Assembly (NCBI GenBank): GCA_964234715.1
Contig: OZ174283.1
Length of the DNA stretch: 64,000 nucleotides
From: Podarcis melisellensis
Taxonomy: Eukaryota
Reading direction: 5' to 3' (one strand)
The notes below the pieces were generated by a model. That model was given only the letters and a program-made list of their open reading frames with translations, had not been told where the DNA came from and did not search any database. Shown in pieces: positions 638 through 42,400 of the stretch. Position numbers and translations under genes: made by a program. Position 1 is the first letter of the stretch, and the number at the start of each line of letters is the position of its first letter.

Positions 638-17458
<16,821 letters not shown>

Positions 17459-20882: not shown

Positions 20883-21413
20883 TTAGACTTCAGAGCTATC
20901 ACTGCTGCTGTGCCGCGTGGTCACAGTTTCATTACTGCTGGAATAGCCAGTGCAGGAATTTGCTTTCCCATTAGTAGAACGTCCCTTTCTCTTCAGTAGG
21001 AAGATGATAATCAAAACTGTGCTGATCAGAAGCAGCAGCCCAGCTGCACCTCCGACAATAGGTACAATCCTGTCTTCCATGTCGCTTCCAGTAATTTCCA
21101 GGACCGGCTTCTCATACGGTTTACCTGGCGGGGACCAATCTTTCTGCTCAATAACAATTTTGTTAGACCGGTCAAGAGCTATGTGCTGGATGTTGGTGCC
21201 TCTATTCTTATCTGCACTGATATCTTGCGCAAGCGTAGGAGCATCCGAGATGGCTCTCCGACTGCGACCAGAATGTGTAGCACCTGGGATTCCACTGGCT
21301 GAAGATAAAAAGTGATGGTACTCGACACTTCTCTTTCCAAGGCCTCTGTGGGCATTCTCACGGGACCGAACCATGTAGATAGTGTGGATGTACCATTCTC
21401 GACCTGCTGCTAC
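20883..21413 (-). CDS. FREM3: FREM3 last coding exon ([13 protein letters not shown]...RSRR...[27 protein letters not shown]...DSSEV*)
   Basis: minus strand aacag|GTA ... TAA; furin-type RSRR, a 25-aa hydrophobic helix followed by KRKGR, and a class I PDZ ligand. Confidence 0.93.
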   Translation of the reverse strand, partial: VAAGREWYIHTIYMVRSRENAHRGLGKRSVEYHHFLSSASGIPGATHSGRSRRAISDAPTLAQDISADKNRGTNIQHIALDRSNKIVIEQKDWSPPGKPYEKPVLEITGSDMEDRIVPIVGGAAGLLLLISTVLIIIFLLKRKGRSTNGKANSCTGYSSSNETVTTRHSSSDSSEV

Positions 21414-24400
21414 CTGTTAAATTAAAAACACACATGACAACTTTAAGCAAATTTAAGTTGCTAAATGCCTCCTAATCTCTCTGGGGCTCAAGATTTCAAA
21501 TATGACTGTCACCCAGAGTACTGCTCCTGACACAAAAATAACATGACAATGCTATTTTGCATGGGAGGGGGGCAGACTTTAACAACACTGTATGCAAACA
21601 TAAAACATGTCCCTTGATTTAAGATGGAATGTTTACAATCTATTCCAGGAGGTATTTGAAGGCGAGGATTATGCATCCCTTGATCAATAACATTTAACTG
21701 TTTTATTTATTTAGTTCTACTGACATGAAAAAAGATTTCATAATAAATAGGTTTGGATTGATGGTGCCCAAAATTGTCTTTCATGTAAATTTATATGACA
21801 AAGAAAGCAAAAAACGTTTTTGACAAAATTCCCAGAACACTTTTTTTTAAAAAAAAATCACTCTTATGCATAAGGCTGCGTTTCGAAAAACTGCAAGAGT
21901 TTTGAAAAATACCTTGCTAGTTAGGAAGCTAGTTTCCAACATACAAAGGTTCTGGAACAATATTGCTCTCAGAGGTTACCTGGAATAGCGGAGTCGACAA
22001 CATGCTGAATCCATCAGACCCTGGCTGCTTTACCAAAGGATAACCATCTATGTGATCAACAGCGAGTTTTGCATTGAAGGCCATATTTCCAAACACTTTT
22101 GCCTGGGTATCAGGCTGAGCTTTATCCTAGAAGACAAAGAAACCAACACTGGTACATTATTACATTCAGGATTTCAAACTTGTTGTATTAGGACTGTGCT
22201 GTAGTGTACCATGGTACATACCAGAATCTTGAATCTGTATAAGAGGGAAGGGGAGTCTGCTAGGCAACCATATTCCTTGTTATCCGGACTGTACTTGGGG
22301 ACATACCCGTCAGCCCCAGTGCACAAAAACACCTTCTCGATGTTACAGATGAAAGAATCTCCTAAATTCTGGACAGGATCCACCATGACACGACCATAGA
22401 TTTCAGAGCCTAGAAATATTTTTAGAAAAAGTTATTTAGGAATACCATTGATACCCCTTACCTTCAAACGCAATCAGACCCCATAGGGCAGACAATAGAA
22501 GACTAATAATATACAATATAGAAATAATTAACATCAATTATTTTTGTTACAATAAATGTAATTAAAAACATACAATAAAATAAAATGTGTACTACTTTAT
22601 ATAAAGCCCGGTATCCCAAAACACAGCATAAACACCTTTAATGCTCCAAAGATCTCAATATTTCTTAAAGTTTTTTGGGGGGGCAGGGATATTTTTCCCT
22701 GATGCCTAAGACAGGCACCCTGTGAACATCTCTGGGAAAGCATTCCAGAGGTGAGGACTCTTTTGTATGTCACCATCTGCTGCACTTCAGAAAGCAGAAG
22801 TACCTGGAGAGAAGTCTCAGATGAAAATGTGAACTGATAAAGGGGAAGGCAATCCAACAGAGATCTAGGTCCTCCGCTCCATTTTTTAAAAGGCCAAAAC
22901 ATACCAGGTGCCAATGAAGTTGTTGCAAGGTAGGCTCTATTAATGTGACTTGCATTAGCAAGTGAGCCACAGTATTTTGAACTAGCTGCAAGTTATGAAC
23001 CTTTGGCCCTTCAGATGTTGCTGAACTGCAACTTCTACCACCTCTGACTATTGTCTATGCTTGCTGGGGTTGTTGGGAGCTGACGTTCAGCAACATCTGA
23101 AGGGCCAAAGGTTCCTCACACCTTGTCTAGAAAGCATGGGTCACTGAGGTCGGAAACCAGGAACCCTTAAGTCTCTGTTGGTGCTGTAAGTATCCAGCTG
23201 AAACCACTCCATTTCTGATACCAAAGTTTGGGGCTCTTTTTTTTAGTAGTGAGAATGTTTGAATACATTCTTTTCATAACTTCTCCCCTGCACCCCACCC
23301 CCAGTTGTTAAGTGGACCATTTGCATCTCATAACTTCACCAAAATATTGCTCTTGCACAGAATTTGAAATGTGCAGAATTAAGCATTCTGAGAATCTCTC
23401 ATTTTGTGCATATGCAAATTTTTAGGCTTCTTGTCAGCAAAGTTGGACTTTAAAATGTACAAGTAATGTCTGCTAAAAAGAAACCAGAGCAGAAAAGGAA
23501 ATGGTGCTTCAAGGGACTACTTCTTGCCCCTCATGTCAAGCAGAATAAAATTGTTCATAATACAGTGGTACCTCTGGTTACGTACTTAATTTGTTCTGGA
23601 GGTCTGTTTTTAACCTGAAACTGTTCTTAACCTGAGACACCACTTTAGCTAATGGGGCCTCCCGCTGCCGCTGCACCGCCGGAGCACAATTTCTGTTCTC
23701 ATCCTGAAGCAAAGTTCTTAACCCGAGGTACTATTTCTGGGTTAGCGGATGTAACCTGAAGCATATGTAACCCGAGGTACCACTGTAAAGCAATTGTGCT
23801 CAATTTGCATGATGTACACAATGGTGCTAACCTTACTTGGTTAGCAAAGTAACTTTGCAATCAGGATGGTAGAATCAGGCTTTCACTTACTGGGCTGACT
23901 AATGTTAAAGTGAATTTGCACAAGCTTATCTTGCTAAATGACTTCACATCAATCCTAGTTAAGCGTTCTCTTTGCATTTCTCAGAGATACAACCATCTTG
24001 TCAAGACATGTTGAGTGCAACCCCACTTTTCCTCACTAGGGGGCAACCCATATCCAACCACACAAGCCCAGGGGGTTCTGCATAATAGATGTTAATTAAG
24101 TACTGATCAAACAGATGGTTTTGCTTTCCTAGCAACAGTTTGAGTATGCAACACATTATGAACACTATGAATCCTACTTTCTAATAGCAATTTCATTCAG
24201 GGTCACTTTGTTCAAGAACTTTCAAACTCAAGAAATGGTTCTTAAATACAGCCACCCTTTAAAACACCCTTGAAGCCTAACCAGAGCTATTTTTCCTGGT
24301 AACTTTTATTAAAGCATCTTCTTCCTTCAAAACACGCCTCCTTTTTCTATTCCCTTTTCACGTTCTCAACTATGAAATCATAGCATTAGTCAAAGGTGGG

Positions 24401-27400
24401 GAATAATATTAAGAAGAAAGAACATTAATTGATCCTAACACGATGCTAAAAGTAGCATGCCAGCATCTATATGTAAAGAGTAAAACTATTTCTTTGCCTT
24501 CTGTGAATGCAACATCTGTTCCTTCTCCAAATCCCATGGAGCCATCAGAAAGCCAGAGGTCCTTCTTTGACAACAGGAACATTTGGGTGTTTAGACTGAA
24601 TTCAGCTGCTACCGGGTCACTGACCTATATAAAAAGAAAAAGAATCACTGTTTTGAAACTCAGCTATTAGTTTCTCAATTTCAGTTCTTTCTGATGCTTG
24701 CTCAACATCAGCTTGCTTGCTTTAGCCCTTCAAATTTAAAACAGCTAATTATGCTGTTTTAAATGTATATTTTATATTTAACTTTCTTTAGTAATTTTTC
24801 TTATGAAATATTTAAGATAATATTTTAGTTTCCTGTTAATTATGTTGTTTTGACTGTATACTTGAACTTATTTGGTAATGTTTTATTCTGGATTGTTTTA
24901 ACTGATGTGTTAATGTAGTCATAAACCACTTTGAGATTTTTCTTCTTAAAAATATAAAGCAGTATAGAAATGAAAATAACAACAACCACAACCTCTTTGC
25001 ACAAGAGCAGAGTCTGTGCAAGCAGACTGAATCCATTAACCCATTTATTAGAAGAAACACACTTTCATCAGAAAGTTCTATTCATAATATAGTGCAGAAG
25101 TCTTGAAGACAACCATACTGAGTGAGACCAGTGGTCCACCTAGGCTTGTATTATCAATGCTGAAGAGCAGTAGCTTCTGAAGACTCAGGCTAAGATCCTT
25201 CCCATCACTTCCTTATTTGATTCCTTTAACTGGTGATTTGGGCATTGATCTTGGGGCCTTCTGCATATAAACCACTACTAATGAATTATGCCCCTCTTCT
25301 TCCCATTCATTAGGCTCAGTATAGCTTTTAAATCTTGGCTGATCCCTCCCATCTTATGGCACTTCCAGGAGAAGGATTTTGGGCCAAACACTCACAAATC
25401 ACTAAAGGACTGTGCTAGTTTTGATGCTCAATGCAGCTGGTTAAAAATGAGAGACCAAGGACCAGCAAGACACCATCAGTGGTACAGTCCAAATCAGTTA
25501 CTACAATGCAGCCCTCTTGTGCTAGCTAGTAGCTCTACACTGAAGTGCCCTCTCTTCTACTTCAAGAGTGGAAAGGGACATGGAGCTGCTGCCCAAAGTG
25601 GTGGGCATGTCAAATGAGCTCTACTCTTTCCCTGTAACCATCCGCAATCCTTCCCAGCCAAGTGATATGGAGAAGATACAGGGAAACATAGCACGCAGAT
25701 AAGTGTGCCAAAATTACGGGGAGAGAGGAAAAATAACTTGGCACAGGGCTGTGATTTTCAAGTGGGACATCAAATTCCACACCCAAGTTTAGCACTACAG
25801 TTAATGGCAAAGAAGATTGGTTGTATCCAATAGCGGCTTAGTGCAAGAACCATGGCAAAATGGGGTCTCTTGTTTGGCTCTTTGGCTAGCTCAAAGTCAC
25901 CACTGGATACAGTCCACTGTAAATTTAAACATTAATTCTGCTCCCCACTCTTCACCCCAAGTAGGTGGATTTTTAAATATTCAGGACCAGCTCTTCTAAG
26001 TCAGTGGAAAATAAAAAATACAGTATGTAAAACAAGTACCGACTCTACTACTGATGAGCTGCACAAGTAAACAATTTAGTTCAATTTAATTGCCAAGGGA
26101 GTGTGCATGATGTGCCAGATAAATGCAGTCAAAATACTTTGTTGAGAGCATTAAACACAAGAGAGGTTTTACCTGCTGGAACCTGATATCTAGATCAAAG
26201 GTGATTGGCTCCCGGGGGCTACAAATGACAGGCTGGGTATATTCTTGGCTGGGTGCAGCAATACAGGGGATAAGTTTCACAGTGTAAGTCCCCGAATAGT
26301 CACGTACCTACAATAAGGGGTGCAAGATCAGAATATGAAGTTTTTGTTTAAAAGTGTTTTAGTTTAATACATGCACACACACACACACAACAAAAAGATA
26401 CTACATTTGTCAATGGTCTCTTTGGCATAATACTGCTTCACTTGGCTGTTTAAATTCATCTGTTTTGGGCATCTACTTTTTAAGAATCATGGTGGCTGCT
26501 TCTGAGCAGAGCATCAGCTGTTTCTTCTCACTGATTCTGACACCCACCCACATCATGCAACTCTTTTTGTCTTCCTACAATCCTAACGTGCAACCCCACT
26601 GAACTCAATGGGATGTACTTCTGAGCAAACATATTTAGGGCTGGATATGCTTAGGATTCAAGAAAGGGCTTAAAAGATTGGTGTTCATTTCTGTCTGCAT
26701 CCAGAGCTGACAGGTATTTTATATTTTAATTAAGGTGAAACCATTATGGCTTTCCTTCTAGCAGTAAGAATCACAGGTGACTGAAGTTATCATTCGAAAC
26801 CAATGTTGAGGCTGACATATCTTTGGTATATAAATCTTCCACTATCTCATCATTTATTTGCATTTTGCTTTTCTCCCCTAAAAGGAAGCCCAAAGTAGCT
26901 TACAACATAAAAAACCCCAAATACATACAAAGCAAAGGACCCCATACCCCCAAAATCTGAAAATAAAAGAACTACAATAAGTCTATATGATAAACATTAA
27001 ATTCAAAACTTAAGAAAACACCAGTTCAGTTAATAAAGAATAAAAAGTACTGATGATTTTTTTTGGAATTGAGAAAATTTTACATTTCAGATTCCAAGAG
27101 GCACTGTGTGAATTGGGCATAACTTTCTCCATAGTTTGTGCCCAGCAGGGGACACTGTAATGGTGTTGAATTTGGAGAAGTGATGTTCATCCATGTATTC
27201 AGACATGAAGCTTGCTGGGTAGCAAAATGCTGGACAAAATACGCAGATGTGTTGGTTTTGGAGAACACACAATCTATCAGCTTAACCAATCATAGAGTTG
27301 TGAGAACAATGTATTATGTAACAGCCACAAGCCTCCCCACCCCCCTCAAAAGGTACCACAGAAAACTGCATTGTTGGCACTCACAGCAAAATCTGAGACA

Positions 27401-30400
27401 AATTTCCATTGCTGCATAGGCTGGTGGAAGGTTTGTTCACTTTGAGAAAGGCTGAGTGTAAATGTGAGGCCAGGGTGATCAGCAGACATCACCATTGATG
27501 ACAAAGAAGTACCTGTCAAGGAAAGGGACACGTTGTTATAATGGAATGAATGTTGCCATCCAGCACACAGTGGCACACAAGGGCTTCTTATGATCTCTGA
27601 AAAGAAATATTTCACTTCTCTTTGATCACAAAAAGCAAAACAAAATCTCCACCCAAAAAAAATAAGGAGAATTTAAGATTCATTGCATACCTAAGGTAGA
27701 AAGCAAAAAGCTAATCTTACCTGGGTGGGACATCACAAATTGCCCTCTGAATCGAATCTCAGTCCTGAAGTAGACAACAAGCCGCCCTTCATCATTGATC
27801 TGCATGCTGGTTGGGTAGAGGGAGCCTAAATTCAAACAACCATTGTCATTACTATATACAAAAAGGTATTAAAGCTTTGCCACTTCTAGCATTTGAGAAT
27901 ATCAGGTGCTACGTACATCCCAGTTTACTGTGATTTTCAGATTGTTTGATTTCAGTGGAATAACTCTATTTGCAAACATGGGGTACCAATCTCCTCTGGG
28001 CAAAATTTTCATGTTTCCCCGCCAAAACAATATGCTGGTACAATTTTGGAGGAGCACACAGAGAGTGTTGAAGGTGATGAATAAATTATTTGTAATAATA
28101 ATAAAAAGTAAAATGTACTCAACATTGTAAACCCAGGGTCAGGGGCTGCCATTATTGGTCATTGTGAGCCATTCTGGAAACCCTATTTCAGCTGAAAAGT
28201 AGATAAAAATGCTTCAATTAAATAAGAACTGAACAAAATCACCTTGGAGCTCAGCTTCTGGTGGGCTTCCTATGCCGTCCTTCCAAAGAATGGCAGTATC
28301 ATACACAAAGGTGAGCTTGAGCTCAGACTGCAAGTCAAAGTGCTGCCAGCCTCCAACAGCAGCCGGGGAATGGAAGACGTAGGAGACATACAGGGGCACT
28401 CGCAGAGTCACATATGACTGGACCAGATTTAACACCTGCAAAACACCATAGTATTTGGTTATGCTATGTTCAGATTGCATCCTGAGAAGTCAATTTCACA
28501 ACCATTCTGGGAATGGTATTAAGTCTCATCCTCATTCCGTCCTGAGTTGCTGAGTTTGACAGATGTTGAGTGTGTACATGTTGGCTCCTGAACAAACTTC
28601 ACTGGCTTTGATTAGAAATCCACTTTGATGATTTATGAATGAATTGCAGCTTGTGTTGAAGTGTGAGAGAATGAAGCACGGATCAAATCCAAGCCGGCAG
28701 GCAGACAGGCAAACACTCTTGCTGGCTTCTGAGATGCAACCCTGGCAAAGAACACAAACACCCTGGAATTGACTTGACAGTCATCCCAAAGTGTAATCTG
28801 GAGTTACAGCTAAGTCCCTATTATAGGATTAAGTTGATACTAACAGTCTCACAATCGTTTGTGACCTCCAGTGCATTCCGGTCCAACTTTCTGGAAGTGA
28901 ATGGGTAATGATTAAGCTCTTGTTCAGTGAAATGGTCATTTAAAGAAACAACAATGCAGATAGTTTGGGGAAGTTAAAACTGAAGCTTGCTTCCCATTTC
29001 CCCTTTACTTAACTTTCAGCACTGATAACAAATCACATGGCAGTTAAGAAATGGGCCAGTCAAAAGTCCAGACATTAATAAACACATGCTATGACTTGCT
29101 CAGAATCCAAACAATAAGAAACACTCAAAAATGAAAGCAGTTCCTCGGCCTTTGATCAAAATTAAAATGCAACTCAAATCTTTACTGACTTGCCCTATCG
29201 ATTATGCTGGATTCCCAACTTCTATCACACCATGGGAGTTGGAGTCCAATAACATCTGGGCAGCCACAGATTTCCCAACCTTGATATGGCAAGTAAATGA
29301 TCCTAATTTTATTTCAATTATCATCAACAAAAAATTCAAGATGCTCTTGTCTAGCCCATTATGCCATGTATATATATACATGTTTACTGCATGCACAATG
29401 GTGTTAAGAGTGGTGACTCCTGACAGGTGGAAGACATCTTTAAGCCTCCATGGACCAACAGGCCAGGGTTCCCACCTGCATGACTGTTTCAACCAAGTTT
29501 TACTCAGAGTAAACCTAACTGAGCCAGGTCCATTCATTTCAAAAGGTGCACTCTGAGTAAAATTTAGTTGAAACAATACTACTGCTGCTGCTTTTAATGA
29601 CTGAACAGTTATTTTCTTTTATTGTTATGTTTTTCTTCTTGTTGTGCTATGACTACTATAAATAAAATAATGAATGAATAAATAATGTTAACCCATTCAC
29701 TACAATGTCATATTTCATCTTCCTTGAACTTGCAAGATAAAATCCCATGTTGCAGTGATACACTTACTGCAAATGAGTTTGCTGTCAACACAGGCATCTT
29801 TTACTTGTGTGTAAGCAGCACATAAGAGACGCGGGTGGCGCTGTGGGTTAAACCACAGAGCCTAGGACCTACCGATAGGAAGGTCGGCGATTCGAATCCC
29901 CGTGACAGAGTGAGCTCCCGTTGCTCGGTCCCTGCACCTGCCAACCTAGCAGTTCGAAAGCACGTACAAGTAGATAAATAGGTACCGCTCCGGTGGGAAG
30001 GTAAACGGCGTTTCCGTGTGCTGCTCTGGTTTGCCAGAAGCAGCTTAGTCATGCTGGCCACATGACCTGGAAGTTGTACGCCGGCTCCCTCGGCCAATAA
30101 AGTGAGATGAGCACCGCAACCCCAGAGTCGGCCACGACTGGACCTAATGGTCAGGGGTCCTTTTACCCTTTACCATTTAAGCAGCACATAAATGGAAATC
30201 TTTGCTTCTCTCTCTGAAAGTGGCTCCACATGTATTTCATGGCAAAGGGGCTTTTGAAATCCAAGGGACAAGGGCTTATCATGTGGTGAAAAGGTTTATG
30301 TCCTTCACACAAAAATCCAATGTACACATGCAACATCTAGTGCCACACAGTTTAAAAGATGATCATGTATGCTCACTAACGAGCATCATGTTATGGTCCT

Positions 30401-33400
30401 ACTGATTAACTTAATGGCATATGAAATAGAACGTGCCTGCCTCTGAGTCTGGGAATCCTTTGTGAAAGTCCAAGCCTTGTTGCTAGGCAGCTTCAAGCTA
30501 CAAGATGCTAAACCCTTGTGTGTGTTCTCTAGAGGTGCTGCTAGATAGAGGCAGGAGGCTGAGTTAATGAGCAGAGTCCAGATGGGGGCGGCTGGGCAGA
30601 GGTGACTAACAGGGGAGCATATGCATTTGGAAACAACCAACAGCTGAACTACATACAGAACTATTTTGCTACAACTGTCATGAATTTTAAAGAAGGGGCA
30701 GGGAAACCACTAGAAACCTTTGTGTGTGGTATGAGCCAACATGACTGCACAAGCGAGTTTTTGACACTCTTCATTTTGCTTTCCTTACAGTTTTACAATA
30801 ATAGTTGGTTTCAATACAAGATGCTGAGTTACCCGTCAGCTTTTACTAATCAAGGGAATGTTGTAAAGATTTAAGTTGGGAATGAGTCAGATTAAAGATA
30901 GATGAGATCAATCATTCATTGGTTTTCACATGTGGGCTCTCTAGAAGACTGTCTGTATTAGTGCAAATCAGTATATCATTCCCTTGTCAGGAGCACACTG
31001 TGTGCCAGACCTCACTCTTGCCTGCCCAGCAAGTGACTGCAATGTCCATGTCACTGCAGTGCTGTGTATGCAGTGAGCTCCCATGCCACATCCATCTTGG
31101 TTACTGAGGTGAGCAGTGTTCGTCATAAATCAAATAGTGTTTCGAATGAGGTCATGCATAGTATTTGACAGTCACTGCACATGACTGCCATGCTGTTTGT
31201 GGCAATTTCTTGGAGCCCAGCAAATGGGAATGTTAGACTTGTGTGGAAGAAGCAAAACCTACACTGGGCCACTATTCCTGTAAAGGAGGTCTGTGATAAT
31301 TGGCAAATCAGGGAGGGGCCGTAGCTCAATGGCCATGCACATTATCTGCATGCAAAAATCCCAGAAAGCTCCAACTTCCACCCTCTGCCCCCAGTAAATA
31401 AATCCTGGACCCGTCTCTGTCTCCAGATTTCAAATATTTTAGCTAGAAGGGTTGGAAAAGATCTCCATATGATGCACCAGAATGCTGCAGCTAGTTAGAG
31501 ATGGATGGGTCAATGATGAACTCAATATAAGTTAGCTTCATGTGTTCATGGCAGGCTCTGCTCTGGATAAATGAGAACGAAACCTGTTTGGCGTAAGAAA
31601 GCACAGCTGGCACAGGTGCAAGCTAAAAAAACAAAACCAGATGCAGCTACCACAAGCAGGTAGCTGTTTCTACCAGTTTTCAGCCAGGCTGTCATGTTGT
31701 ACCTAATCTGAAGGTACCGTAACAAGTGTGCCTGTATAACCAGGATCAGAGTTAAGTGCTAAAGGCAATTCAGATTTAGCAAGCTCTGTATTGACCTGGG
31801 TGGGTTCCAGCAATCACACTGACTTGTGGCTAACAGTAGAGAGTGGTTTAATAGGACAGATAAACAAGGAAGCTTGCAGCCACCAACGGAGTGGCATAGA
31901 AGTAAAAGGTTCAAAATGTAACATCTTAGGCTTCTGTGTTTGCCAGGGAAGAGCAGGCCAGAGTAGCAGCAGGGGCTGCTGGGAATTACAGACACAAGAC
32001 TCCATAATCTCATTATAATGCAAATTAAAACAAAATTACTCCATTAGTCTCTGTAAAGTTACACTAAGAAGAGTGAATCCCGAACAGAATGAAATAAAGG
32101 AAATTGGAGGGAATAGAAAGCCCCTCACTTTTACCAAATGTTTCTAAATATTAATGATGGTTTAAAAGGATTTGCTCCCAAAGTTCCTTTGAAATCTTGG
32201 TGTGGATCATTATGAGCTTGGCACCAGCCTCCACTTTCATCCAAACTTACCTGGCAGTGGAGACGCCAAACACCAGCACCAGGGAGCTTCATTATACCTG
32301 ACATAGCTGTGCTCCAGAAACCAGATTCCTTGGGAAATGTAGTTCCTTAGGGCACCTGAGTCTTAGGAACACTAAGTAAAGTATTTTTTCAAGAAGCTTT
32401 GATTTTCAATCTTGTGCAGCCCCATCCCCCTGACTATTTCAGTGTGCCACAGAGATGTCTTAAGAAACCGTCAATGACGACATTTTGCCAAGCAAATTAA
32501 TTTCCGATGGTAGAGTCACTATTTGGTGTTTAAACTCAACCTGTTCTAAGATATGGACCATTAATAACAACACGGGTAGTACTGGAAATGCATCAAGTAT
32601 CGCACAGAAAAGCAAAACACAAGAAAGGAAACTAAATCCTACTTCCACAAACCCGTTAAGTACAGTTATGGAGCAGATGCCAAGATACCCTTCAGCTGCC
32701 ATATAAAACTCAATTATCGCCCCATGGCTTCCATAGAGACGGGCTCAGTGGCAGAGCCCGCCCATTTAAATGAGTCAGGCAGTGAGGGATGTAAAGGACC
32801 TCACCCACAAGAGCCACCACCATTCGGAGTAGATAAATGGACAAATAAGGCTAGATAGGTGAATAGTTTGTCTTTGTATAAAGGCAGCTTCGCAAGTTCC
32901 CATGCCGGAAACTCAAGTGCATGCAACTGGGCATAATGCTAGCATTTTCTTTTCAGTTACATAGGCTTGCTTTTCATGCACGCAGCATACCTGACCATCT
33001 GTGCCAATGGAGCCACTGCAGTCGGTCAGCAGTTCTGACATGTGATAGTAGCTGTTAAACTCCCACAGGCAGGCCTCCAGATTGAGGTTACGGTAGAAAC
33101 GCAAGGTCTTGGCAGATCGCACAGCGCTGCTGTACTGGTAGGGTGAAGTTTCTCCAATCACTTCTGGGTTCTTGGTCTCCTCTGTGATGAATCCGTAAGT
33201 TGTCTCAATTTCGTTATAATCCAAGAGGTTTGAGCACTTGTGATTTCCTACACGAGTGCCATCAGGGCTAAGAGTCAGCTCAAAATTGGACAAAGGTCTA
33301 GTTGATATAACTGGCAGCATCCCTGAAAATAGGAGGACATGTAAGAAAAGCCATATAAAGCAACCTGTTTTGCACAGTGGGCAACCATGAGAATTCCACA

Positions 33401-36400
33401 GTTCTTCCCTAACAACTGGTACATTCAGGGGCAGGATAGCATCACAACTAGCACCAATGGTAGCCTTATCTCCATGATTTTTAAACCCATTTAAGTTGGT
33501 GGTCACCATCCCATATTGAGAGGGTGAATCCAAGTGTTTAACCATGAATCACCAGTCATGTGATTGTGATGACAGATAGTGCTGCACCAGTTGTTGTTCA
33601 GTATTAATCAAATGCACGTGTCTGCTACTTACCATCCATATGAGGCATTGTAACTGTTAATTTGATCAGGTTGGAATAGTCAGGATCATCAGGACCTGTG
33701 TAACGTATTCTGGCTGAGAAAGGTTCTGCTCCGACCGTCCCTGGTATACGGGGCTGACACAATCCTACGTGGAAAAGGGCAAAAGGTTGATTAAAAACAA
33801 AGTGAGAGCAATTCAGCTTTGCCTTTCCTTGGAAGAACCAAATTTTAAAATGCTGATACTTTAAAAACTCATGGAATCTTATGGTTGACATAATATACTC
33901 TTGATCTGATTGTGAAGCCAACACTACTGAGCACAGCCCCAGTTTACTTGAGTAGCAGCAGGGCCACTTTTTCTTCCATGCAGCACCACCCCCAATTCAA
34001 GAGGACAGGAACCAGTGTGGGATGAAGCTTTCCTCTACCTCCACGGGAAAGACAGAAGCTATACTATGCATCACAGATGGCGCCATCTTGGTCTCTCATT
34101 CACAGGAACTGCTGTACGGACTGATATTGCCCTTTTATTTCACTTCCTGATGATGAAACTAAGTTATATTGGGCCTGTGCCTGCCTGTGGGATCATACCC
34201 ACAGGTATGATCCATATACTCATCCATATATGATTAAACATCCAGTTCCAGCAGGTTGCAGAGCAGACATGTGAGAGCAGAGCTCTTTGCTTTGATTATG
34301 GAACTTGCCTACTTTACAGTTTCAGCTGCAAGATGTAAGGAAACTCTTGGTGGAAGTGCAAAATATGATAACAGGACAAAATACGTGATGGGCTACAACC
34401 AAGGTTTGCCTTCTGGTTTACAGCTTGTAGTTCAGCAGGGGAAATGAAACATGAGCCAGGGGTTGGATGACATGCTCAGTCAAACCATGGCTTGGCTCAG
34501 CACATCGGCAAAACGGCCATAACATCCCTGTGTGCAAAGTCACTGATTTCCATAGCCTTTCCACCCATTTCATTAAGGTGAAAGCGCTACAAGAAGCAGA
34601 CATATACTATACAACTTTGCAGAGGATGAGAACCTCAGGACTGGATCTGAATGTGGCCCTCCAAGCTTTTCTATCTGGCCCCCAAACTTTCCCCAGGATA
34701 GACCCCCCTCCCCAACCACATCTCCTACATCCCGTGCTTCACATCCGCTGTGTGTGTCCTTGAACTATAAAAAAGCCCTTTGAAACAAACATCTATTTCA
34801 GCTTCACAAAAACCTCTTGATTTTACTTCATTCATGAAGACTTTCTGCTTCCTTACCTTCTCCTCTGTTTATTGTGTAAATTGGGCTCAGTAATTCTAAA
34901 CCCACATCTCCATTGGCATTGACAGCACGTGCTGCACACTGGACCCTCGAACCAGCCTGGAAATATATGGAGTCCAAGGCAATGGACTTGGTGTTGGTGA
35001 AGAAAGTGTTGGAGTCCACTTCTCGCATGGGACTGGTAACCCCATCACTGCCACTTGGAGCGCTGACAAGCCAGCGATACAAAGTCAGCGTGTCATTGAT
35101 GTTTTCAGCAGCACAAATAGATCCAGTCTTGTCATAATCTGAATATTTGGGGTTGCATGCCTGAAGTTAAATAGAAACATACAATGAATCCATTGAGTTA
35201 TATCTAAACATGCTCCAGGAAAGTAAATAATTCAGATCAAATTCTAAGTAAAATGTATTTTTCCTCATGTTGCATTAGTATTTAAGAAGTTCATTTTTTT
35301 TCTTGCTACTGGTTTCATCACCATAGATGCTGCATTTTAGTTTCATAATAATTGAGAAATTGAATCTTAATGTATGTGGCATATAAAATTAACAATCTGA
35401 TACTGTGGAAAGCCTTCAATTTATCACAGCTCAGATGCCTCCCAGGTGCTTGGAAGGAAAAGAAACCTGTGTCATATAATATATGTAAATGATACCATGC
35501 ATTGGCTAAAGTCAGAAAAAAGGCAGGAACTGAAGTTCATTTCTTCTTGTGCTTTCATCCAATTGTGAGCCAGAGCTTGAAAATTTAATAAGTTTAAACT
35601 GGCCTCAGTTTCCCAAAACAGAAAAGTAAGAACCTGGATAGGATACAACCTCCATGGACGGCTCATTGAGTGGTATTGAGCATCTTACTATCTCTTTACA
35701 TCAGTTTTCTATCTGTGAAATGGGAGTAAAAGTGACTCATCTCACGGGCATGCAAAATGAAGATCACAATATGCTCTGAAAACTGAAACTGCTATAAAAT
35801 GCCAAATATCAGTTCTCGAGAAATGAGGTGTGTAATTCTAAGTACTGAAATTGAATGCATGCCTTAAGCCTCTAGGAGAGCTAAGGAGATCATAGAATCA
35901 CATAGAACTGTAGAGTTGGAAGGGAACCCAAGTGTCATCTAGTCCAACCCCCTACAATGCAGGAATCTCAACTGAAGCATCCATGACAGATGGCCATCCA
36001 ACCTCTGCCTAAAAACCTCCAAGGAAGGAGAGGCCACCACCTCCCAAGGGGATCCATGCCACTGTTTTACACATCCAGAAAGTGTTCACTTCCTAGCTAG
36101 TAGCAGACCTTTAGAAAATATAATCTGGAGAAGAGCTGGCAGAGCAGAGCGTACCGTTACACACACAACAGGGTAGCCAGTTGGAGGCTGGGGGTTTCCT
36201 TTGCTTTTAGCAGTGTCGTCATACAGCAAGAGAGAGACAACCTGGGGCACAGCTGGGAAAGTCACATCTGCCACACTGTCCATTTCTTCAATGTACACAA
36301 TAGCTTTGTTCATCTGAAAGGAAAGGCAGAAAAGAAGGTTCCATCTGCAGGCATGCTGCTTCTACTGTAAACTTTTATACTGCAACCTTTGCAAGATGGA

Positions 36401-39400
36401 GCAGAAAGGTTCCTTTCCACTGGAGTAAGGAAACATTTGGATCCACACTATGTCTGTTATAAGGTATCTTTTTTAAAAAAATGCACTAAGCTAACTCAAT
36501 TTCCAAAACTTTTAATAAAAGCAAACAAACAACCAGATGACATCAGATGGCTGTTTGTATGTGAAATAAGTTCTGCCACAAAACAGATAATGTTTGAGCA
36601 CAGATTAGGCACATAATAAAAATAGGTATTTTTCATTGAGGGTCCAACTAGGTACGATTAGATTGTATTTGAACACATTTCTCAAATAGCACCTAGGGGG
36701 AAGGATTTCAAATTAAGTAAAAGGGAGAAGGATGAAACTTCCTTCAGTGTCACAGTTCTGTTTAGATTTGAGGTCCTGCGTATCTGATACCAAAGGTGTT
36801 TTTTTTAAAAAAAAAAAGCAGGAGACCTGATCCTAGGCTTCCAGTCTAGTTTGGTCCTCAAAATTGGCATCTAAGGAAGTAAAAAAACAGCGACACTTTT
36901 ATTTGTTGCTGTTTCTGAATCATCATGATCAAAGGCAATTGTGTCCACAACTAACCAAAAATAACCTAGTTCTTACCTGTGTCTCAGCTACCATATTCTC
37001 ATCTGGTTTCAGGTGCACTGTGAATGCTTCACGCATTTCTCTCACTCCATCATACAAAACTTCAACCTCAACAAAGTGTTCTGTTTCTCCTTCTTTGAAT
37101 TCAATATCTGAAATGAAGATATATTATAGAAAGAAGTAAACTTTCCCTCTCCAGTCATCAGCACAGTTAGGCTAGGTTCCAAAAGGCAACAGTCTTGGCT
37201 CCTCACAAGCCGTGTCAAACTCATGTTGGGCAGCTGGCTGGCAGAAAACCAACTGCTAAAAACCAAGCAAAATATCTAGGACTAGTACGAATAGTCTAGG
37301 GGTGCTCATTGTTGTCAGTGGAGGTTAACAGCGGCTGAAGGCACCCTTTCTCAGTTTTGGCTGTTGTGCCAGATTCTGGACAGGGATCCGATGACCAGAG
37401 GGATCCATGCACTGGTAACCTAAGGATTGGACTGTTGTAATACACACTGTGTAGGGCTGCCCTTAAGGTTGGTCTGGAAGCTTTAGCTCATGGGTAGGCA
37501 AACTAAGGCCCAATCGCCTTCTAAATCCGGCCTGCGGACGGTCCGGGAATCAGTGTGTTTTTACATGAGTAGAATGTGTGCTTTTATTTAAAATGCCTCT
37601 CTGGGTTATTTGTGGGGCATATGAATTCATTCATTCCCCCCCCCAAAAAAAATATAGTCTGCCCACAAGGTTTGAGGGACAGTGGACCGGCCCCCTGCTG
37701 AACAAGTTTGCTGACCCCTGCTTTAGCTTGTGTAAAATGCAGCAGTTGGGTTGCTAACAGGAGCAGCCTACTTTGATTATGAAACATCTCTGCTAAATAA
37801 GCAGCACTAGATGCCAATTTGCTACTGAGTCAAGCTTAAGTGTCTGTTGCTGACTTTAAAAAACACTTAACAATCTGGTCAGTGGAGGAAATACCTGCAC
37901 CCATATAGGCCGCCCAGGCTACTGAAATTCTCAGGGCGATGCCCTCTTGGTTGTACCACAGCCTATGGAACTACCTCTGGTAGTGACCAACGGAAGAGAA
38001 GGCCTTAGCTGTTGTGCACTCAGCTGTATTTTAATTTGCATTCAACTGAGCTAATTTATAATGTGTTTTTACTGGTTTAAAATTATAATCTGCATGCATA
38101 TGAAAGGTGTGTGGGGGGGTGTGTGTGTAAATAAATAGCATTTACTGTAGTTTTTCTAAGATTCAGAGGAAAATCTCACCGTCAGACATTGGATTATAGT
38201 CTTCTCCAGAGGTAGCTGAACCATCTTTAGTATGGATTCTCACAATGGAAACTTTGGAACTGTCCCCCACACGCAAGACTGGAATCTTTACAACTGCAAT
38301 CTCCCCAGGCTCTTGAGGTTCTTGAATGCTGTATTTGATTTCGGAGAACTTAATCACTGGTTCTGCAAGAAAACTGAAAAACATCACTCTCTCCTATTTA
38401 ATAATGTTATTTATACATAGGCAGAATTGTCTGAAGGACACATGCAGGATTGTATCCTTAGTGCGTATAGGGTGTCTCTGGAGATGAACAACAAAAAATG
38501 TGCACACAAAGCCATCAAACAACACCAGAAAAAAAATGAAAAGCAATGAGCTGTCTGTCAGGACAGCAGCAAAGAACACAGAAATAAAATTAATTCACCT
38601 ATGCATCCTGCACCCACTTTTCATTTTCTTGTTTTGTCTTCTTTCAGCTATTGAATTAAGCTTTCTTTACATTTTAAAATCTCCAATATTCACTTGGGGG
38701 AGTGTATGGGTATGGTTTTTTAGTAACATGATATTTTTTCAACAAGAATTGATTGTACTACTGGGAACAATGCTATTTTTACGCAAGCAATTAAAAAACA
38801 ACTGTGCTTGAATGCAGGGCATATGAGAAAATAAACGAATGCTTTGTTCCATTTAATCCCACACCTTTGATCTGACAATATGTAATGAGTACAAAGTGGC
38901 TGATAAACTCACTGTCTTCTTCATCTTTAATCTTCACCAAAGTTTCTTTTTGTTCCCCAACGGAGGCACCAAATGTTGAAGTGCTTTTAGGTGTTCCAAG
39001 CACCAGTCTGAACTCTTCCTCCTCTTCATAGATGGCATCATCTTCAAGGACCACCACACACGGCTTCTCAATCTCTCCTGCAGGAGGCAAAACACCAGAT
39101 TAGTTGACATAAATATTTTGGGTAGCACCTACAATCTAACTCCAATTTCCAAATTAAATATATGCTGGGTTGTCTCCAATGTTGTGCAAGAAAAAGTCAG
39201 CTCACGCCATAGAACATTATCTTCCCCTCCTCTGATGCTGGTGTGTGTGTGCATGTGTGAATACTGAACATTAAGGACTACAGTAGAGGGGGAATTGCCC
39301 AGAATATAATTCACTGGCTTCACATTGAGGGCTCCCTTTGAAGCCCCTTTGAACCTTAAAAAAATGATTTAATATTTGTATGTTAATTTCCCAACAACAA

Positions 39401-42400
39401 AACTGAGCTGAATGCTTAATCTGAAGGAAGCACAACTGAATTCAATAGGTATCTGAAGAAGTGTGCATGCACACGAAAGCTCATACCAAAAACTAACTTA
39501 GTTGGTCTTTAAGGTGCTACTGGAAGGAATTTTTTTTGTTTTGACTATGGCAGACCAACACGGCTACCTATCTGTAACTGAATTCAATAGGATTTACTCC
39601 CTAGTATGTGAATGTATAGGACTGCAGACTTAGGGCCCTTTTAGACTAGCGGGGTTGTTGTTTTTTGTGTAGCATGTCACTAAGCAAATAGCAGTGCATT
39701 AGTAGTGGATTTATATTGAGCCACATAATTTTGCTTTCCTGGTTGTTCTGTGATGCTTCCTCATTGCTGTCACATTATTGGCATTTGGAGGGGTGCTCTT
39801 GCAGTACAGCACAACAGGAGCAGGACAAAGCAACAACATTTGTGGTACAGGATGCAGTTTTTCATCAGAAGGTACAGAACATGCATCAACTGGAACTTGA
39901 AACTTTTGCAACTGCAAATTATCACTGAAAGAAGGATTTCGTCTAACTGCCCTGGTACAGATACTGTCATGAATGCACAATAAAAAAAGGAAGCCTGGAA
40001 CAACCCTTAGTTGCTACAAACTTTGGTCAGTTATAAATAAAAACAAGCCCTTTCATGATAAATTTTGAAAATGCAATAGCTTCCTTGCAAGAGAAACTCT
40101 TGCTTTCTAAGGATGAGACCTTACCTGGGAGGAAGACCACTACAGAGTCATCAGTGTTTGGTCTCTCTTCATAGTCCATCATGACCTGGGCAGAGCCTTG
40201 GCGGGTGTAGCAGCGGACTGTAGATTTATGATTAACATCACCACTACGGTAAATTATAGCTGCCAGTTGCCCATCTTTTTCATTCACTGTGTATACAGGT
40301 TCCTTGAACTGGACTTTGGGTACTAGAGGGGAGGGAAGCATTCCAGCATCATGAGTTAGTCTTTTTATATCTCGCTATGATCACCTATGATTCAGATTCA
40401 TATGGGGCCATTTCATGGTAATTCATCACCTTTCTCTTACATTCATACTGGGGAAAAGTTAAAACGTTAAGTTCATATCAACAGTTACACAGGATTACTG
40501 ATGTGCATATGTGTGTGCATAATATAATTAGGGGGGGGGTGTTTGTGCTGGGAGCACGAATGTGGAAATCGCAGCAGTTCCTATGCATGTTTACTTGGAA
40601 GTAAGCCACACTGTGCTCAATGGGACTTAATAAATGTGTTTGGGATTGCAGCCACAAACAACTTTCCCCTTAGTGAATTTTCTAGGCAATTGAAAGGTTG
40701 TAGAATCTAGAGTACTTACAATCAGTGATGGTATCATTGATGAAAATGGTGGTTTTGCTTGGTTCCCCAAGTACTGCATTCATGGGCATTCGTAGAACAA
40801 GTTCAAACTTTTCTGGTCCCTCAAGGACAGGCTGTCCTAAATCATCCAAGATGGTCACACGGAAAGTCTGCATATTTACACCAGGTACAAAATCCAGGTT
40901 TCGGCTGATGCCAACGTAATCAACTCCAGCTACATAAGAAGCAAGAGGGACTATTTCGAATCACATCCATTAGATTTTACAACTGTCTTATTAAATTAAT
41001 ATTTATTTTATTCATAGAATGATAGAATTGTAGAGTTGGAAGGGATCCCGAGGATCATCTAGTTCAACTCCCTGCTTTGCAGGAACCTCAACTAAATCAT
41101 GCATGACAGGGGACCACCCAACATCTGCTTAAAAAGGTACAAGGAGAGTCCACCACTTCTTGTGGATGTCTGTTCCACTGTCAAACAGCTCCTACCATCA
41201 GAAAAGTCTTCCTGATGAATCTCCTTTCTTGTATCTTGGAAGCCACTGATTCGGGTCTTACCCTCCAGAGCAGGAGAAAATAAGCTTGCTCCATCTTCCA
41301 TCTTTAGTTATTTGAAGATGGCCATGATATCTTCTCAGTCTCCTCTTTCTGAGGCTAACCATACCCAAATCCCTCAACAGTTCTTCATAGGGCTTGGTTC
41401 TAAGTGCTCACAGACCAGCCATTTCATTATCTGTTCTAGGACATTTCCTGGAATCAACATTAAGCTGACTGGTTGGTCACCTGAGTCTTACCTGAGTCTT
41501 CTTTCACCCTGCTTTTGAAGATGGGGATAACATTTGCCTGCCTCCACTCTGCAGGTACCTCATCTATTTTCCAATAATTCTCAAAGATTATAGACAGAGG
41601 CTGATATTACATCTGCAAGCTCTTTAGTAGCTCTTTAGTGCAGCTCATTAACAATTATTAACCATTACATTTATTTTTAGCAAATCAGATTTTTGTCTTA
41701 TTGTTATTCTTAGGTTAGTTGGATTAAACCAATTAAATTCCTCAGTTGCACTCTAAAAATAAAAATATTAGGTTCTCTTATAATTTTGCCCATAATTCCA
41801 CACTCTGGAATCACAATATCTGAAGGAAACTGTTGGGGAGTATTCTGGGCAGCTATTTATTGAAAATGTGTACTGAGATTTTCCTGGGGAAATCTGCATA
41901 TGTCTGAATAATGCACAATGCAAACGTATCTGGACTTAAAGATGACATCTGCACAGAGCAGAAATCAATGCTGAGATACAGCACATCAGTAATGCCTCTT
42001 GGAAAAATTAATTCACCTTCTGCAGATAATGGTTCTGTTTTCCTGGAGCGCACAGTGACAGTGGCTGCTTTAGACAGGTCAGTTCCAGTTCTCCAAACAC
42101 GAACTTCGATGTGGCCAGCACTCTCAGCCACATGATATTCTGTGTCACCAAAGTAAAAAGCAGGTTCTAGAAGCGGAACATAAAAAGGAGAAAAGAGATA
42201 AGAGCTCATCAATTTCCCAAAAGACAGTGATCAGGTAACAAACCTGTAACTTGCAAACAAATGAATCAGCAGGGCAATCCTTTTAGGGAAATCTCTTGTA
42301 AGTAAAATGAGTTAGAACTACGCAACCAAAGGAACAAAATGATTTTTTTAAAAATGATTTTTGGCAATTAACAAAAATTGTTGCCAAAATAGAGTCCTTT

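What the first reader, a model, noticed from the sequence alone, without database searches (positions are those of the whole stretch)
20883..40322. FREM3 here is a full-length, membrane-anchored FREM2-like protein, unlike truncated mammalian FREM3
Seen: past the exon ending ...NDTITD, 16 further exons (3158 nt, about 1050 aa) splice in frame with no stops. They encode two more Calx-beta repeats, the FRAS1/FREM2-type C-terminal region, a TM helix and a cytoplasmic tail ending DSSEV. Known: human and mouse FREM3 lie next to SMARCA5 but are short secreted proteins with three Calx-beta repeats and no TM, whereas FREM2 has five Calx-beta repeats, a TM and a GRIP1-binding PDZ motif. As I recall, fish frem3 is also long. 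Inference: this lizard keeps the ancestral anchored FREM3, giving it a second GRIP1-linked Fraser-complex component that could matter for skin and scale basement-membrane adhesion, and the truncation is lineage-specific. Annotation pipelines may mislabel this gene FREM2-like.
Basis: partly seen in the sequence, partly recalled or inferred. Interest (0 to 1): 0.75.

Follow-up and report, generated by a model that had tools for sequence, protein, structure and literature searches.

The report
Full-length anchored FREM3 in a lizard
This wall-lizard gene is an ordinary, already annotated full-length FREM3; placental mammals are the odd ones, having cut the gene short and left dead exons behind.

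Summary
Past the exon ending NDTITD (40720), 16 further minus-strand exons (40322 down to 20883, 3158 nt with the stop) splice in frame. They encode Calx-beta repeats 4 and 5, the conserved C-terminal region, one TM helix and a 36-residue tail ending DSSEV. Spliced transcript contigs from four public runs join 40720|40322 and four neighbouring junctions exactly as modelled. Differences between those contigs and the window are 17 synonymous to 1 non-synonymous.

It is FREM3, not FREM2. It lies tail to tail with SMARCA5, sits inside squamate FREM3 in the trees, and is 99.6% identical and gapless to the public 3190-aa Podarcis FREM3 records. Long FREM3 is annotated from sharks to birds, and zebrafish Frem3 was described as Frem2-like in 2010. 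The finding is therefore true but already known.

- Placental FREM3 ends by reading through this same splice donor. Decayed copies of the lost exons survive downstream of the stop in squirrel, rabbit and otter.
- A 2026 paper lists FREM2 among orthologues it could not retrieve in 261 squamate genomes, and my searches found no squamate FREM2. Long FREM3 is then probably the only FREM2-type subunit in lizards, not a second one.

The parts
62130..62360 (-). FREM3 exon E1 of the window (end of Calx-beta 1); the gene's 5' part lies beyond 64000
   Evidence: tblastn to Rhineura FREM3 residues 1823-1904, 85%; Pfam Calx-beta 7e-14; GT donor
60874..60999 (-). exon E2 (first half of Calx-beta 2)
53329..53580 (-). 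exon E3 (second half of Calx-beta 2)
   Evidence: 94% to Rhineura FREM3; Pfam Calx-beta
42017..42166 (-). exon E4 (first half of Calx-beta 3)
   Evidence: joint 42017|40929 in four runs
40720..40929 (-). exon E5, ends NDTITD; last coding exon shared with placental FREM3
   Evidence: placental FREM3 ends about 10 codons past this donor
40323..40719 (-). intron 5 (397 nt); read-through would add [12 protein letters not shown] and a stop; holds no AATAAA or ATTAAA
   Evidence: removed in contigs of four runs
40125..40322 (-). exon E6, first half of Calx-beta 4
   Evidence: Pfam positions 7-60, 3.6e-07; joints on both sides
38913..39077 (-). exon E7, second half of Calx-beta 4
   Evidence: Pfam positions 71-118; joints
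38180..38362 (-). exon E8, first half of Calx-beta 5
   Evidence: Pfam positions 7-59, 1e-07; joints
36977..37107 (-). exon E9, second half of Calx-beta 5
   Evidence: Pfam positions 64-99, 1e-04; joint 38180|37107
36155..36313 (-). exon E10, start of the FRAS1/FREM2-type C-terminal region
   Evidence: 94% to Rhineura FREM3; splice sites
34857..35160 (-). exon E11
33633..33764 (-). exon E12
32991..33322 (-). exon E13, the most conserved C-terminal exon
   Evidence: 164 library proteins match at E<=0.001, including FREM2, FREM3, FRAS1 and invertebrate relatives
28243..28435 (-). exon E14
27721..27825 (-). exon E15
   Evidence: 100% to Rhineura FREM3
27385..27512 (-). exon E16
26173..26307 (-). 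exon E17
24498..24624 (-). exon E18, followed by the only GC donor of the model
   Evidence: the junction is gapless against Podarcis FREM3 proteins
22222..22409 (-). exon E19
21980..22126 (-). exon E20
20883..21413 (-). last exon E21 with the stop codon
21255..21266 (-). RSRR, a proprotein-convertase-type site. It aligns with RKKR/RQKR of FREM2. A conserved GKRS lies at 21327-21338.
   Evidence: alignment, coordinates; cleavage itself is inferred
20994..21068 (-). transmembrane helix
20886..20993 (-). 36-residue cytoplasmic tail; its last residues DSSEV (SEV at 20886-20894) form a class I PDZ-ligand motif
   Evidence: DSSEV is nearly invariant at the end of FREM2 and long FREM3 from lamprey to birds
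2119..17458 (+). SMARCA5 (ISWI ATPase), convergent neighbour. Its stop is at 17458, 3.4 kb from the FREM3 stop.
   Evidence: the same arrangement in Rhineura and shrew

Best explanation
The minus strand from 62.4 kb to 20.9 kb carries the 3' half of the lizard orthologue of FREM3. It is a full-length 12-CSPG Fraser-family protein of about 3190 residues. The window encodes the end of Calx-beta 1, Calx-beta 2-5, the C-terminal region shared with FREM2 and FRAS1, a juxtamembrane convertase-type site, one TM helix and a short cytoplasmic tail ending DSSEV.

Shown here: the exon structure, its splicing in transcripts, purifying selection on the downstream exons, and orthology to FREM3.

Inferred from what is published for mouse and zebrafish FRAS1 and FREM2: the protein is made as a type I membrane protein in basal epidermal cells. 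GRIP1/2 take it to the basal surface through the SEV PDZ ligand. A furin-type convertase sheds its ectodomain. The ectodomain then joins FRAS1 and FREM1 below the lamina densa to anchor epithelium to mesenchyme.

The long form is the ancestral jawed-vertebrate state. Placental mammals derived the short secreted FREM3 by reading through the donor of exon E5 and letting the 16 downstream exons decay.
For: - Exon model: in frame, canonical splice sites, 3158 nt for E6-E21.
- Transcripts: spliced contigs of 12.7, 9.1, 5.3 and 1.1 kb from four runs in four studies cross E4 to E9 at the modelled borders.
- Selection: in exons E4-E9 the contigs differ from the window by 17 synonymous and 1 non-synonymous change, pN/pS 0.017. 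In E6-E9 alone the counts are 9 and 1, binomial P 8e-06.
- Identity: 99.4-99.6% and gapless over 1374 residues to Podarcis FREM3 records of 3190 aa; 91-94% to other lizard FREM3, equal in E1-5 and E6-21; 70-75% to FREM2 in E6-21.
- Trees: FREM3 clade 100*, the window inside squamate FREM3 100*. On the 322 columns shared with placental FREM3, all FREM3 fall on one side of a branch at 99/94*.
- Synteny: convergent with SMARCA5 here and in Rhineura and shrew.
- Domains: five Calx-beta in lizard FREM3 and tuatara FREM2, three in horse FREM3.
- Conserved features: convertase-type site, TM helix and DSSEV.
- Literature: furin-dependent shedding and GRIP binding of Fras1/Frem2, and zebrafish Frem3 partly redundant with Frem2a and of identical domain structure (PMC2855323).
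- Dead exons downstream of the placental FREM3 stop.
Against: - No experiment on any reptile FREM3 exists. GRIP binding, shedding and complex formation are all inferred by homology.
- The runs laid are only guessed to be RNA. Intron-less contigs argue that they are.
- Contigs cannot show expression level or exclude a minor read-through isoform.
- The 5' half of the gene (Frem_N and CSPG repeats) lies outside the window. It is known only from orthologues.
- Splicing of E10-E21 was not seen directly. One laying call was allowed, and it covered E4-E9.
Confidence: 0.9

Rival explanations
1. The gene is really the FREM2 orthologue, moved next to SMARCA5 or wrongly named FREM3. That would explain why no other FREM2 is found in squamates.
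For: No squamate FREM2 was seen and FREM2 is reported as unretrieved in squamates. FREM2 and long FREM3 have the same architecture and both end in DSSEV.
Against: The window protein is nested in squamate FREM3, within amniote FREM3 that also holds placental FREM3. It is 91-94% identical to lizard FREM3 and 70-75% to FREM2 in E6-21. Tuatara has both genes, and the window groups with tuatara FREM3. The convergent SMARCA5 neighbour is the same as in shrew and Rhineura.
Confidence: 0.02
2. The long form is a minor isoform. The main lizard product is a short secreted FREM3 of the mammalian type, made by reading through the E5 donor.
For: Read-through gives a stop after 12 codons ([12 protein letters not shown]), and placental FREM3 ends in just this way. 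Contigs cannot measure isoform ratios.
Against: In all four runs the FREM3 contig crossing this point is spliced 40720|40322; other contigs laid inside the intron look like repeats. The 397-nt intron has no AATAAA or ATTAAA. The downstream exons are under strong purifying selection and as conserved as the upstream ones.
Confidence: 0.07
3. The downstream exons belong to a separate transcription unit, or are decaying relics as in mammals.
For: None beyond the mammalian precedent.
Against: Single contigs bridge E4 to E9. The 1374 codons hold no stop or frameshift. Synonymous to non-synonymous changes are 9 to 1 in E6-E9. The true relics in squirrel and otter carry stops and frameshifts and are only 36-64% identical.
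Confidence: 0.01

Closest known systems
FREM3 of non-mammalian vertebrates (e.g. RefSeq XP_028600819.2 Podarcis muralis, 3190 aa; zebrafish Frem3 of Carney et al. 2010)
   Same: It is the same gene. It is 99.6% identical and gapless to the Podarcis records. It has the same 5 Calx-beta repeats, C-terminal region, TM helix and DSSEV end, and the same SMARCA5 neighbour.
   Different: Nothing of substance. The window holds only the 3' 43% of the coding sequence.
FREM2 (Fraser syndrome protein, e.g. human Q5SZK8)
   Same: Identical architecture in the part seen, a convertase-type site at the same place, a TM helix and the identical last five residues DSSEV. It is 70-75% identical over E6-E21.
   Different: It is a paralogue, in a separate clade (98*) at another locus (with STOML3 on chicken chromosome 1, per PMC13005343). 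FREM2 is reported as unretrieved in squamates.
Placental mammalian FREM3 (about 2130 aa, secreted)
   Same: It is the orthologue, with the same SMARCA5 neighbour. It shares everything up to the end of Calx-beta 3 (64-76% identity over E1-E5).
   Different: It stops about 10 codons into the former intron 5. It has 3 Calx-beta repeats and no C-terminal region, TM helix or PDZ ligand. In mouse it localises independently of Fras1 and its loss causes no Fraser phenotype (PMC7004800, PMC10095167).
FRAS1
   Same: It shares the Calx-beta repeats, the C-terminal region, a TM helix and a C-terminal TEV PDZ ligand. It is shed by furin and trafficked by GRIP1.
   Different: Only 29-37% identical. It has N-terminal VWC and furin-like repeats and is about 4000 aa long.

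Membership tests
FREM3 orthologue group | Groups with FREM3 rather than FREM2 in a gene tree that includes mammalian FREM3 | tested here: met
   FREM3 clade 100*, squamate FREM3 100*. On the shared 322 columns all FREM3 fall on one side at 99/94*, and amniote plus placental FREM3 at 99/90*.
FREM3 orthologue group | Convergent neighbour of SMARCA5 | tested here: met
   SMARCA5 lies on the + strand and ends at 17458; the FREM3 stop is at 20883. The same arrangement is found in Rhineura and shrew. The two genes share one human chromosome 4 region in PMC4559194.
12-CSPG Fraser-complex proteins of the FREM2 type | Frem_N (NV) domain and twelve CSPG repeats | not testable with these tools
   That part of the gene lies outside the window. 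Pfam finds Frem_N and 11 Cadherin_3 stretches in the Rhineura orthologue. The Podarcis records run 1816 residues upstream of the window's first residue.
12-CSPG Fraser-complex proteins of the FREM2 type | Five Calx-beta repeats | tested here: met
   Exon-by-exon Pfam hits cover the end of repeat 1, the second half of repeat 2 and both halves of repeats 4 and 5. Repeat 3 (E4-E5) was not scanned in the window; it maps to Pfam stretch 2021-2141 of the Rhineura orthologue, which has 5 stretches in all.
12-CSPG Fraser-complex proteins of the FREM2 type | Single C-terminal TM helix with a short cytoplasmic tail | tested here: met
   A 25-residue hydrophobic stretch followed by KRKGR, and a 36-residue tail.
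12-CSPG Fraser-complex proteins of the FREM2 type | C-terminal class I PDZ ligand that binds GRIP1/2 | tested here: inconclusive
   The motif DSSEV is present and identical to that of FREM2. Binding cannot be tested here.
12-CSPG Fraser-complex proteins of the FREM2 type | Proprotein-convertase-dependent ectodomain shedding | tested here: inconclusive
   RSRR aligns with RKKR/RQKR of FREM2 and GKRS is conserved. Cleavage is shown only for mouse Fras1 and Frem2.
Mammalian-type short secreted FREM3 | Protein ends just after the third Calx-beta repeat, with no TM helix | tested here: not met
   Transcripts splice on from 40720 to 40322. 1052 further codons are open and conserved.

The most novel reading that the evidence does not exclude
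The FREM2/FREM3 pair was sorted in opposite ways in two amniote lineages. Squamates lost FREM2 and depend on the long, GRIP-linked FREM3 as their only FREM2-type partner of FRAS1. Placental mammals kept FREM2 and cut FREM3 down to a secreted protein by reading through one splice donor, leaving recognisable dead exons between FREM3 and SMARCA5. If so, knocking out FREM3 in a lizard should give a Fraser-like blebbing phenotype, which mouse Frem3 loss does not give.
Probability: 0.5. Interest if true: 0.55.

Novelty: already known. Interest (0 to 1): 0.3.

Why it matters
As stated, the finding adds nothing to public annotation. The same 3190-aa FREM3 model is in RefSeq for the same genus, and the Frem2-like structure of fish Frem3 was published in 2010.

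The useful outcome is context. The mammalian literature treats FREM3 as a short protein that works independently of the Fraser complex, but that is a derived placental state. Its origin can be read from the genome: read-through of one donor, with decayed exons downstream.

Together with the reported absence of FREM2 in squamates, this makes lizards a natural test of whether long FREM3 can carry the whole FREM2 role in skin, digit, eye and kidney development. It also warns against transferring FREM2 and FREM3 names by best hit.

Tried and rejected
- **Wrong first guide.** The first full-length guide, P0010, was the best long hit to exon E13. It turned out to be a true bird FREM2, not FREM3. E13 is too conserved to tell the paralogues apart, so I changed to Rhineura FREM3 as guide.
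- **Splice chaining.** A greedy chain of HSPs lost exons, and the first junction solver failed on short exons. This was fixed.
- **Trees.** The mixture-model tree did not finish, so LG+G4 was used. On the short shared region the FRAS1 outgroup attached beside the amniote FREM3 group that includes the placental rows. I take this as possible long-branch attraction. Holding FREM3 together gave a higher likelihood (p-AU 0.58), and leaving FRAS1 out gave a clean split.
- **Searches that gave nothing.** Earlier notes of this scan hold nothing on FREM2 or its neighbours. The supplement of PMC13005343 is not held. No paper deals with lizard FREM3.
- **Loci without DNA.** None could be had for Rhineura, Chrysochloris or Tenrec, because the gene or the file was too large.
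- **Shrew.** No dead exons were found in the 10-kb flank searched, of which only 4.2 kb lies between FREM3 and SMARCA5.
- **Left out on the operators' rule.** The joined spliced protein was sent to no search tool. Searches were exon by exon, by reference. The join was used only in local scripts for alignment, identity and trees.
- **Other limits kept.** The N run at 56369-56497 was left as it is. No primate locus was fetched. One human FREM2 protein and one chimpanzee FREM3 protein returned by the homology searches served as tree rows.
Full report
**What is in the window.**
SMARCA5 lies on the plus strand from about 2.1 kb. Its last codons...[10 protein letters not shown], end at 17458. Its exons are 78-100% identical in translation to the ISWI gene next to shrew FREM3. 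A large gene of Calx-beta exons runs on the minus strand from at least 62.4 kb down to a stop at 20883. The two genes are convergent, and their stop codons are 3.4 kb apart.

**Check of the observation.**
I mapped a full-length lizard FREM3 (Rhineura, P0298) on the window with tblastn. I then solved each junction for AG/GT (or GC) borders, an open frame and the best fit to the guide. This gives 21 exons.

The 4125-nt model has one stop, at its end. All acceptors are AG behind pyrimidine tracts. All donors are GT except a GC donor after 24498.

Pfam was run exon by exon, by reference. E6 and E7 match Calx-beta profile positions 7-60 and 71-118. E8 and E9 match positions 7-59 and 64-99. These are repeats 4 and 5. 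The last exon holds a 25-residue hydrophobic helix, a KRKGR stop-transfer and a 36-residue tail ending DSSEV. The joined protein was not sent to any search tool. It was used only in local scripts.

**Is it transcribed and spliced?**
Twelve runs of one organism (coded A) and several runs of related organisms hold about 14% of the sampled words of 32.9-42.2 kb. The exons make up about 21% of that stretch.

I laid four runs from four studies on 36.9-42.2 kb. Each has a contig that lies only on E4 to E9. The contigs are 12,748, 9,068, 5,293 and 1,137 nt long. Their joints are at 42017|40929, 40720|40322, 40124|39076, 38913|38362 and 38180|37107, all with GT..AG ends on the minus strand. The 12.7-kb contig goes on for 3.75 kb past E9, which is enough for the remaining 2.48 kb of coding sequence plus a 3' UTR.

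The contigs differ from the window at 18 exonic changes. Seventeen are synonymous and one is V to I. This gives pN/pS 0.017. In E6-E9 alone the counts are 9 to 1, binomial P 8e-06.

**Which gene is it?**
The most conserved C-terminal exon (E13) hits FREM2, FREM3, FRAS1 and invertebrate relatives alike. My first guide, a tinamou protein, proved to be a true FREM2.

A search with coelacanth FREM3 showed that records named FREM3 of 3100-3200 aa exist in many groups. These are sharks, ray-finned fishes, lungfish, amphibians, turtles, crocodilians, birds, tuatara and many squamates.

| Compared with | Identity of the window's model |
|---|---|
| Podarcis lilfordi, muralis and raffonei FREM3 (3190 aa) | 99.4-99.6%, gapless over all 1374 residues to their last residue |
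| Other lizard FREM3 | 91-94%, the same in E1-5 and E6-21 |
| FREM2 | 70-75% in E6-21 |

Two maximum-likelihood trees were built.
- **Whole region** (58 rows, 1369 columns, FRAS1 outgroup). It gives a FREM3 clade (100*), with the window inside squamate FREM3 (100*) beside Rhineura. The FREM2 clade (98*) is separate.
- **Shared region** (the 322 columns shared with the short placental proteins, without the distant outgroup). All FREM3 rows, placental ones included, fall on one side of a branch (99/94*). Amniote FREM3 with the placental rows has 99/90*.

The same convergent ISWI neighbour lies 3.5 kb from Rhineura FREM3 and 4.2 kb from shrew FREM3. The gene is therefore the FREM3 orthologue. The gene model is already public under that name.

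**What is already known.**
[quoted passage not shown] Its loss gives no Fraser phenotype (PMC7004800).
- Mouse FREM3 localises independently of Fras1 (PMC10095167).
- Pfam here finds three Calx-beta repeats in horse FREM3, the last ending 13 residues before the C-terminus. It finds five in Rhineura FREM3 and in tuatara FREM2.
- Carney et al. [quoted passage not shown] They showed partial redundancy with Frem2a, furin-dependent shedding of Fras1 and Frem2, and a role of Grip1/2 through the conserved C-terminal residues (PMC2855323).

**Likely mechanism.**
In the alignment of the juxtamembrane region, the window's RSRR lines up with RKKR or RQKR of FREM2. A GKRS site, the motif [13 protein letters not shown], the TM helix and the final DSSEV are conserved in FREM2 and long FREM3 from lamprey to birds.

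From this I infer, but have not shown, that lizard FREM3 behaves like FREM2. It would be a type I membrane protein, sorted basally by GRIP1/2 through the SEV ligand, shed by a furin-type convertase, and stabilised together with FRAS1 and FREM1 under the basement membrane.

**How the mammalian form arose.**
All short FREM3 proteins retrieved (about 2100-2250 aa) are placental. They end ...TITD followed by CKQSACSSFH or similar.

In the lizard, E5 ends ...ACT GAT T, followed by the donor GTAAGT. Reading through gives T|GT AAG, that is C K, then a stop after 12 codons. The placental C-terminus is thus the read-through of this same donor.

I fetched four placental loci and searched the 10 kb past the FREM3 stop with the lizard's E6-E21 protein.

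| Species (locus) | Relics found downstream of the stop | Identity | Damage |
|---|---|---|---|
| Squirrel (L001) | E7, E8, E13 (inverted), E14, E15, E19, E20 in exon order | 37-64% | In-frame stops; E13 split across two frames |
| Otter (L004) | E6, E11, E12, E13 | 36-63% | In-frame stops; E11 split across two frames |
| Rabbit (L003) | E14 | 59% (E 3e-10) | Not examined |
| Shrew (L002) | None; only 4.2 kb separate FREM3 from SMARCA5 | - | - |

The reversed query gave no hits. Ten shuffled queries gave none in three flanks and one in the otter flank. The lost exons are therefore still visible as dead exons. This supports a truncation in the mammalian line rather than a gain elsewhere. Whether marsupials and monotremes share it is open, because none of their FREM3 proteins appeared.

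Three results argue against that.
- Among the best 120 relatives of a bird FREM2 there are birds, turtles, crocodilians, tuatara, mammals, amphibians and fishes, but no squamate.
- The 90% clusters of tuatara, turtle and crocodilian FREM2 hold no squamate.
- Every squamate record named FREM2 that I met sits in a FREM3 cluster.

A 2026 study of 261 squamate genomes lists FREM2 among the orthologues it could not retrieve. In chicken FREM2 lies in a chromosome 1 cluster with STOML3 and INTS6. The study attributes the BLAST coverage it saw to paralogues, and it never mentions FREM3 (PMC13005343). Its text places FREM2 both under 'ortholog loss with retained paralog' and under 'remain as unretrieved', so its classification of FREM2 is not settled.

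The simplest reading is that long FREM3 is the only FREM2-type gene in squamates. I could not test this on the genome itself.

**Verdict.**
The orthology and the ancestral-state inference are supported and strengthened. The claim of a second subunit is probably wrong. The novelty claim fails, because the model is in RefSeq and the idea has been in the literature since 2010.

What may be new is the reciprocal pattern: FREM2 gone in squamates, and FREM3 truncated in placentals with dead exons left behind. That goes beyond the finding as posed, and half of it rests on a published absence that I could not verify on the genome itself.

Noticed in passing
L001:75254-80868; L004:96108-103441; L003:102521-102643: Decayed copies of the ancestral FREM3 exons E6-E21 lie downstream of the annotated FREM3 stop in squirrel, otter and rabbit. 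The squirrel and otter copies carry stops and frameshifts.
   Followed up: yes
L001:77541-77872: The squirrel relic of exon E13 lies on the opposite strand to the other relics, which suggests a small inversion after the exons died.
   Followed up: no
window 24496-24497 (donor after exon E18): This is the only GC-AG intron of the model. The junction is gapless against Podarcis FREM3 proteins, but it was not covered by the one laying call.
   Followed up: partly
window 37431-37784, 39378-39731, 40971-41324: Intronic stretches reach contig depths of thousands to over a hundred thousand in the transcript runs, with many variants and loose ends, so they are high-copy expressed repeats. The middle one overlaps the Penelope-type insertion noted earlier (s1-505082).
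   Followed up: partly
window 56369-56497: A run of 129 N lies in the intron between E2 and E3.
   Followed up: no
proteins P0504, P0505, P0524 (Gekko kuhli), P0517 (Varanus), P0318, P0331 (birds), P0282, P0343 (fishes): These records are named FREM2 or FREM2-like but belong to FREM3 clusters or rank among FREM3 hits, so best-hit naming confuses the two paralogues. An axolotl 'Frem2' regeneration marker was likewise reassigned to the Frem3 locus (PMC12923738).
   Followed up: partly
(hit lists): No marsupial or monotreme FREM3, long or short, appeared, although their FREM2 did. The state of FREM3 in those mammals is open.
   Followed up: no
P0376 (Falco tinnunculus FREM3): This Ensembl model ends ...NAGSQI instead of DSSEV, probably through a different last exon in the model.
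   Followed up: no
tree: Placental FREM3 sits on a long stem (0.18) and mouse on a long tip (0.46). This fits relaxed or changed constraint after the truncation.
   Followed up: no
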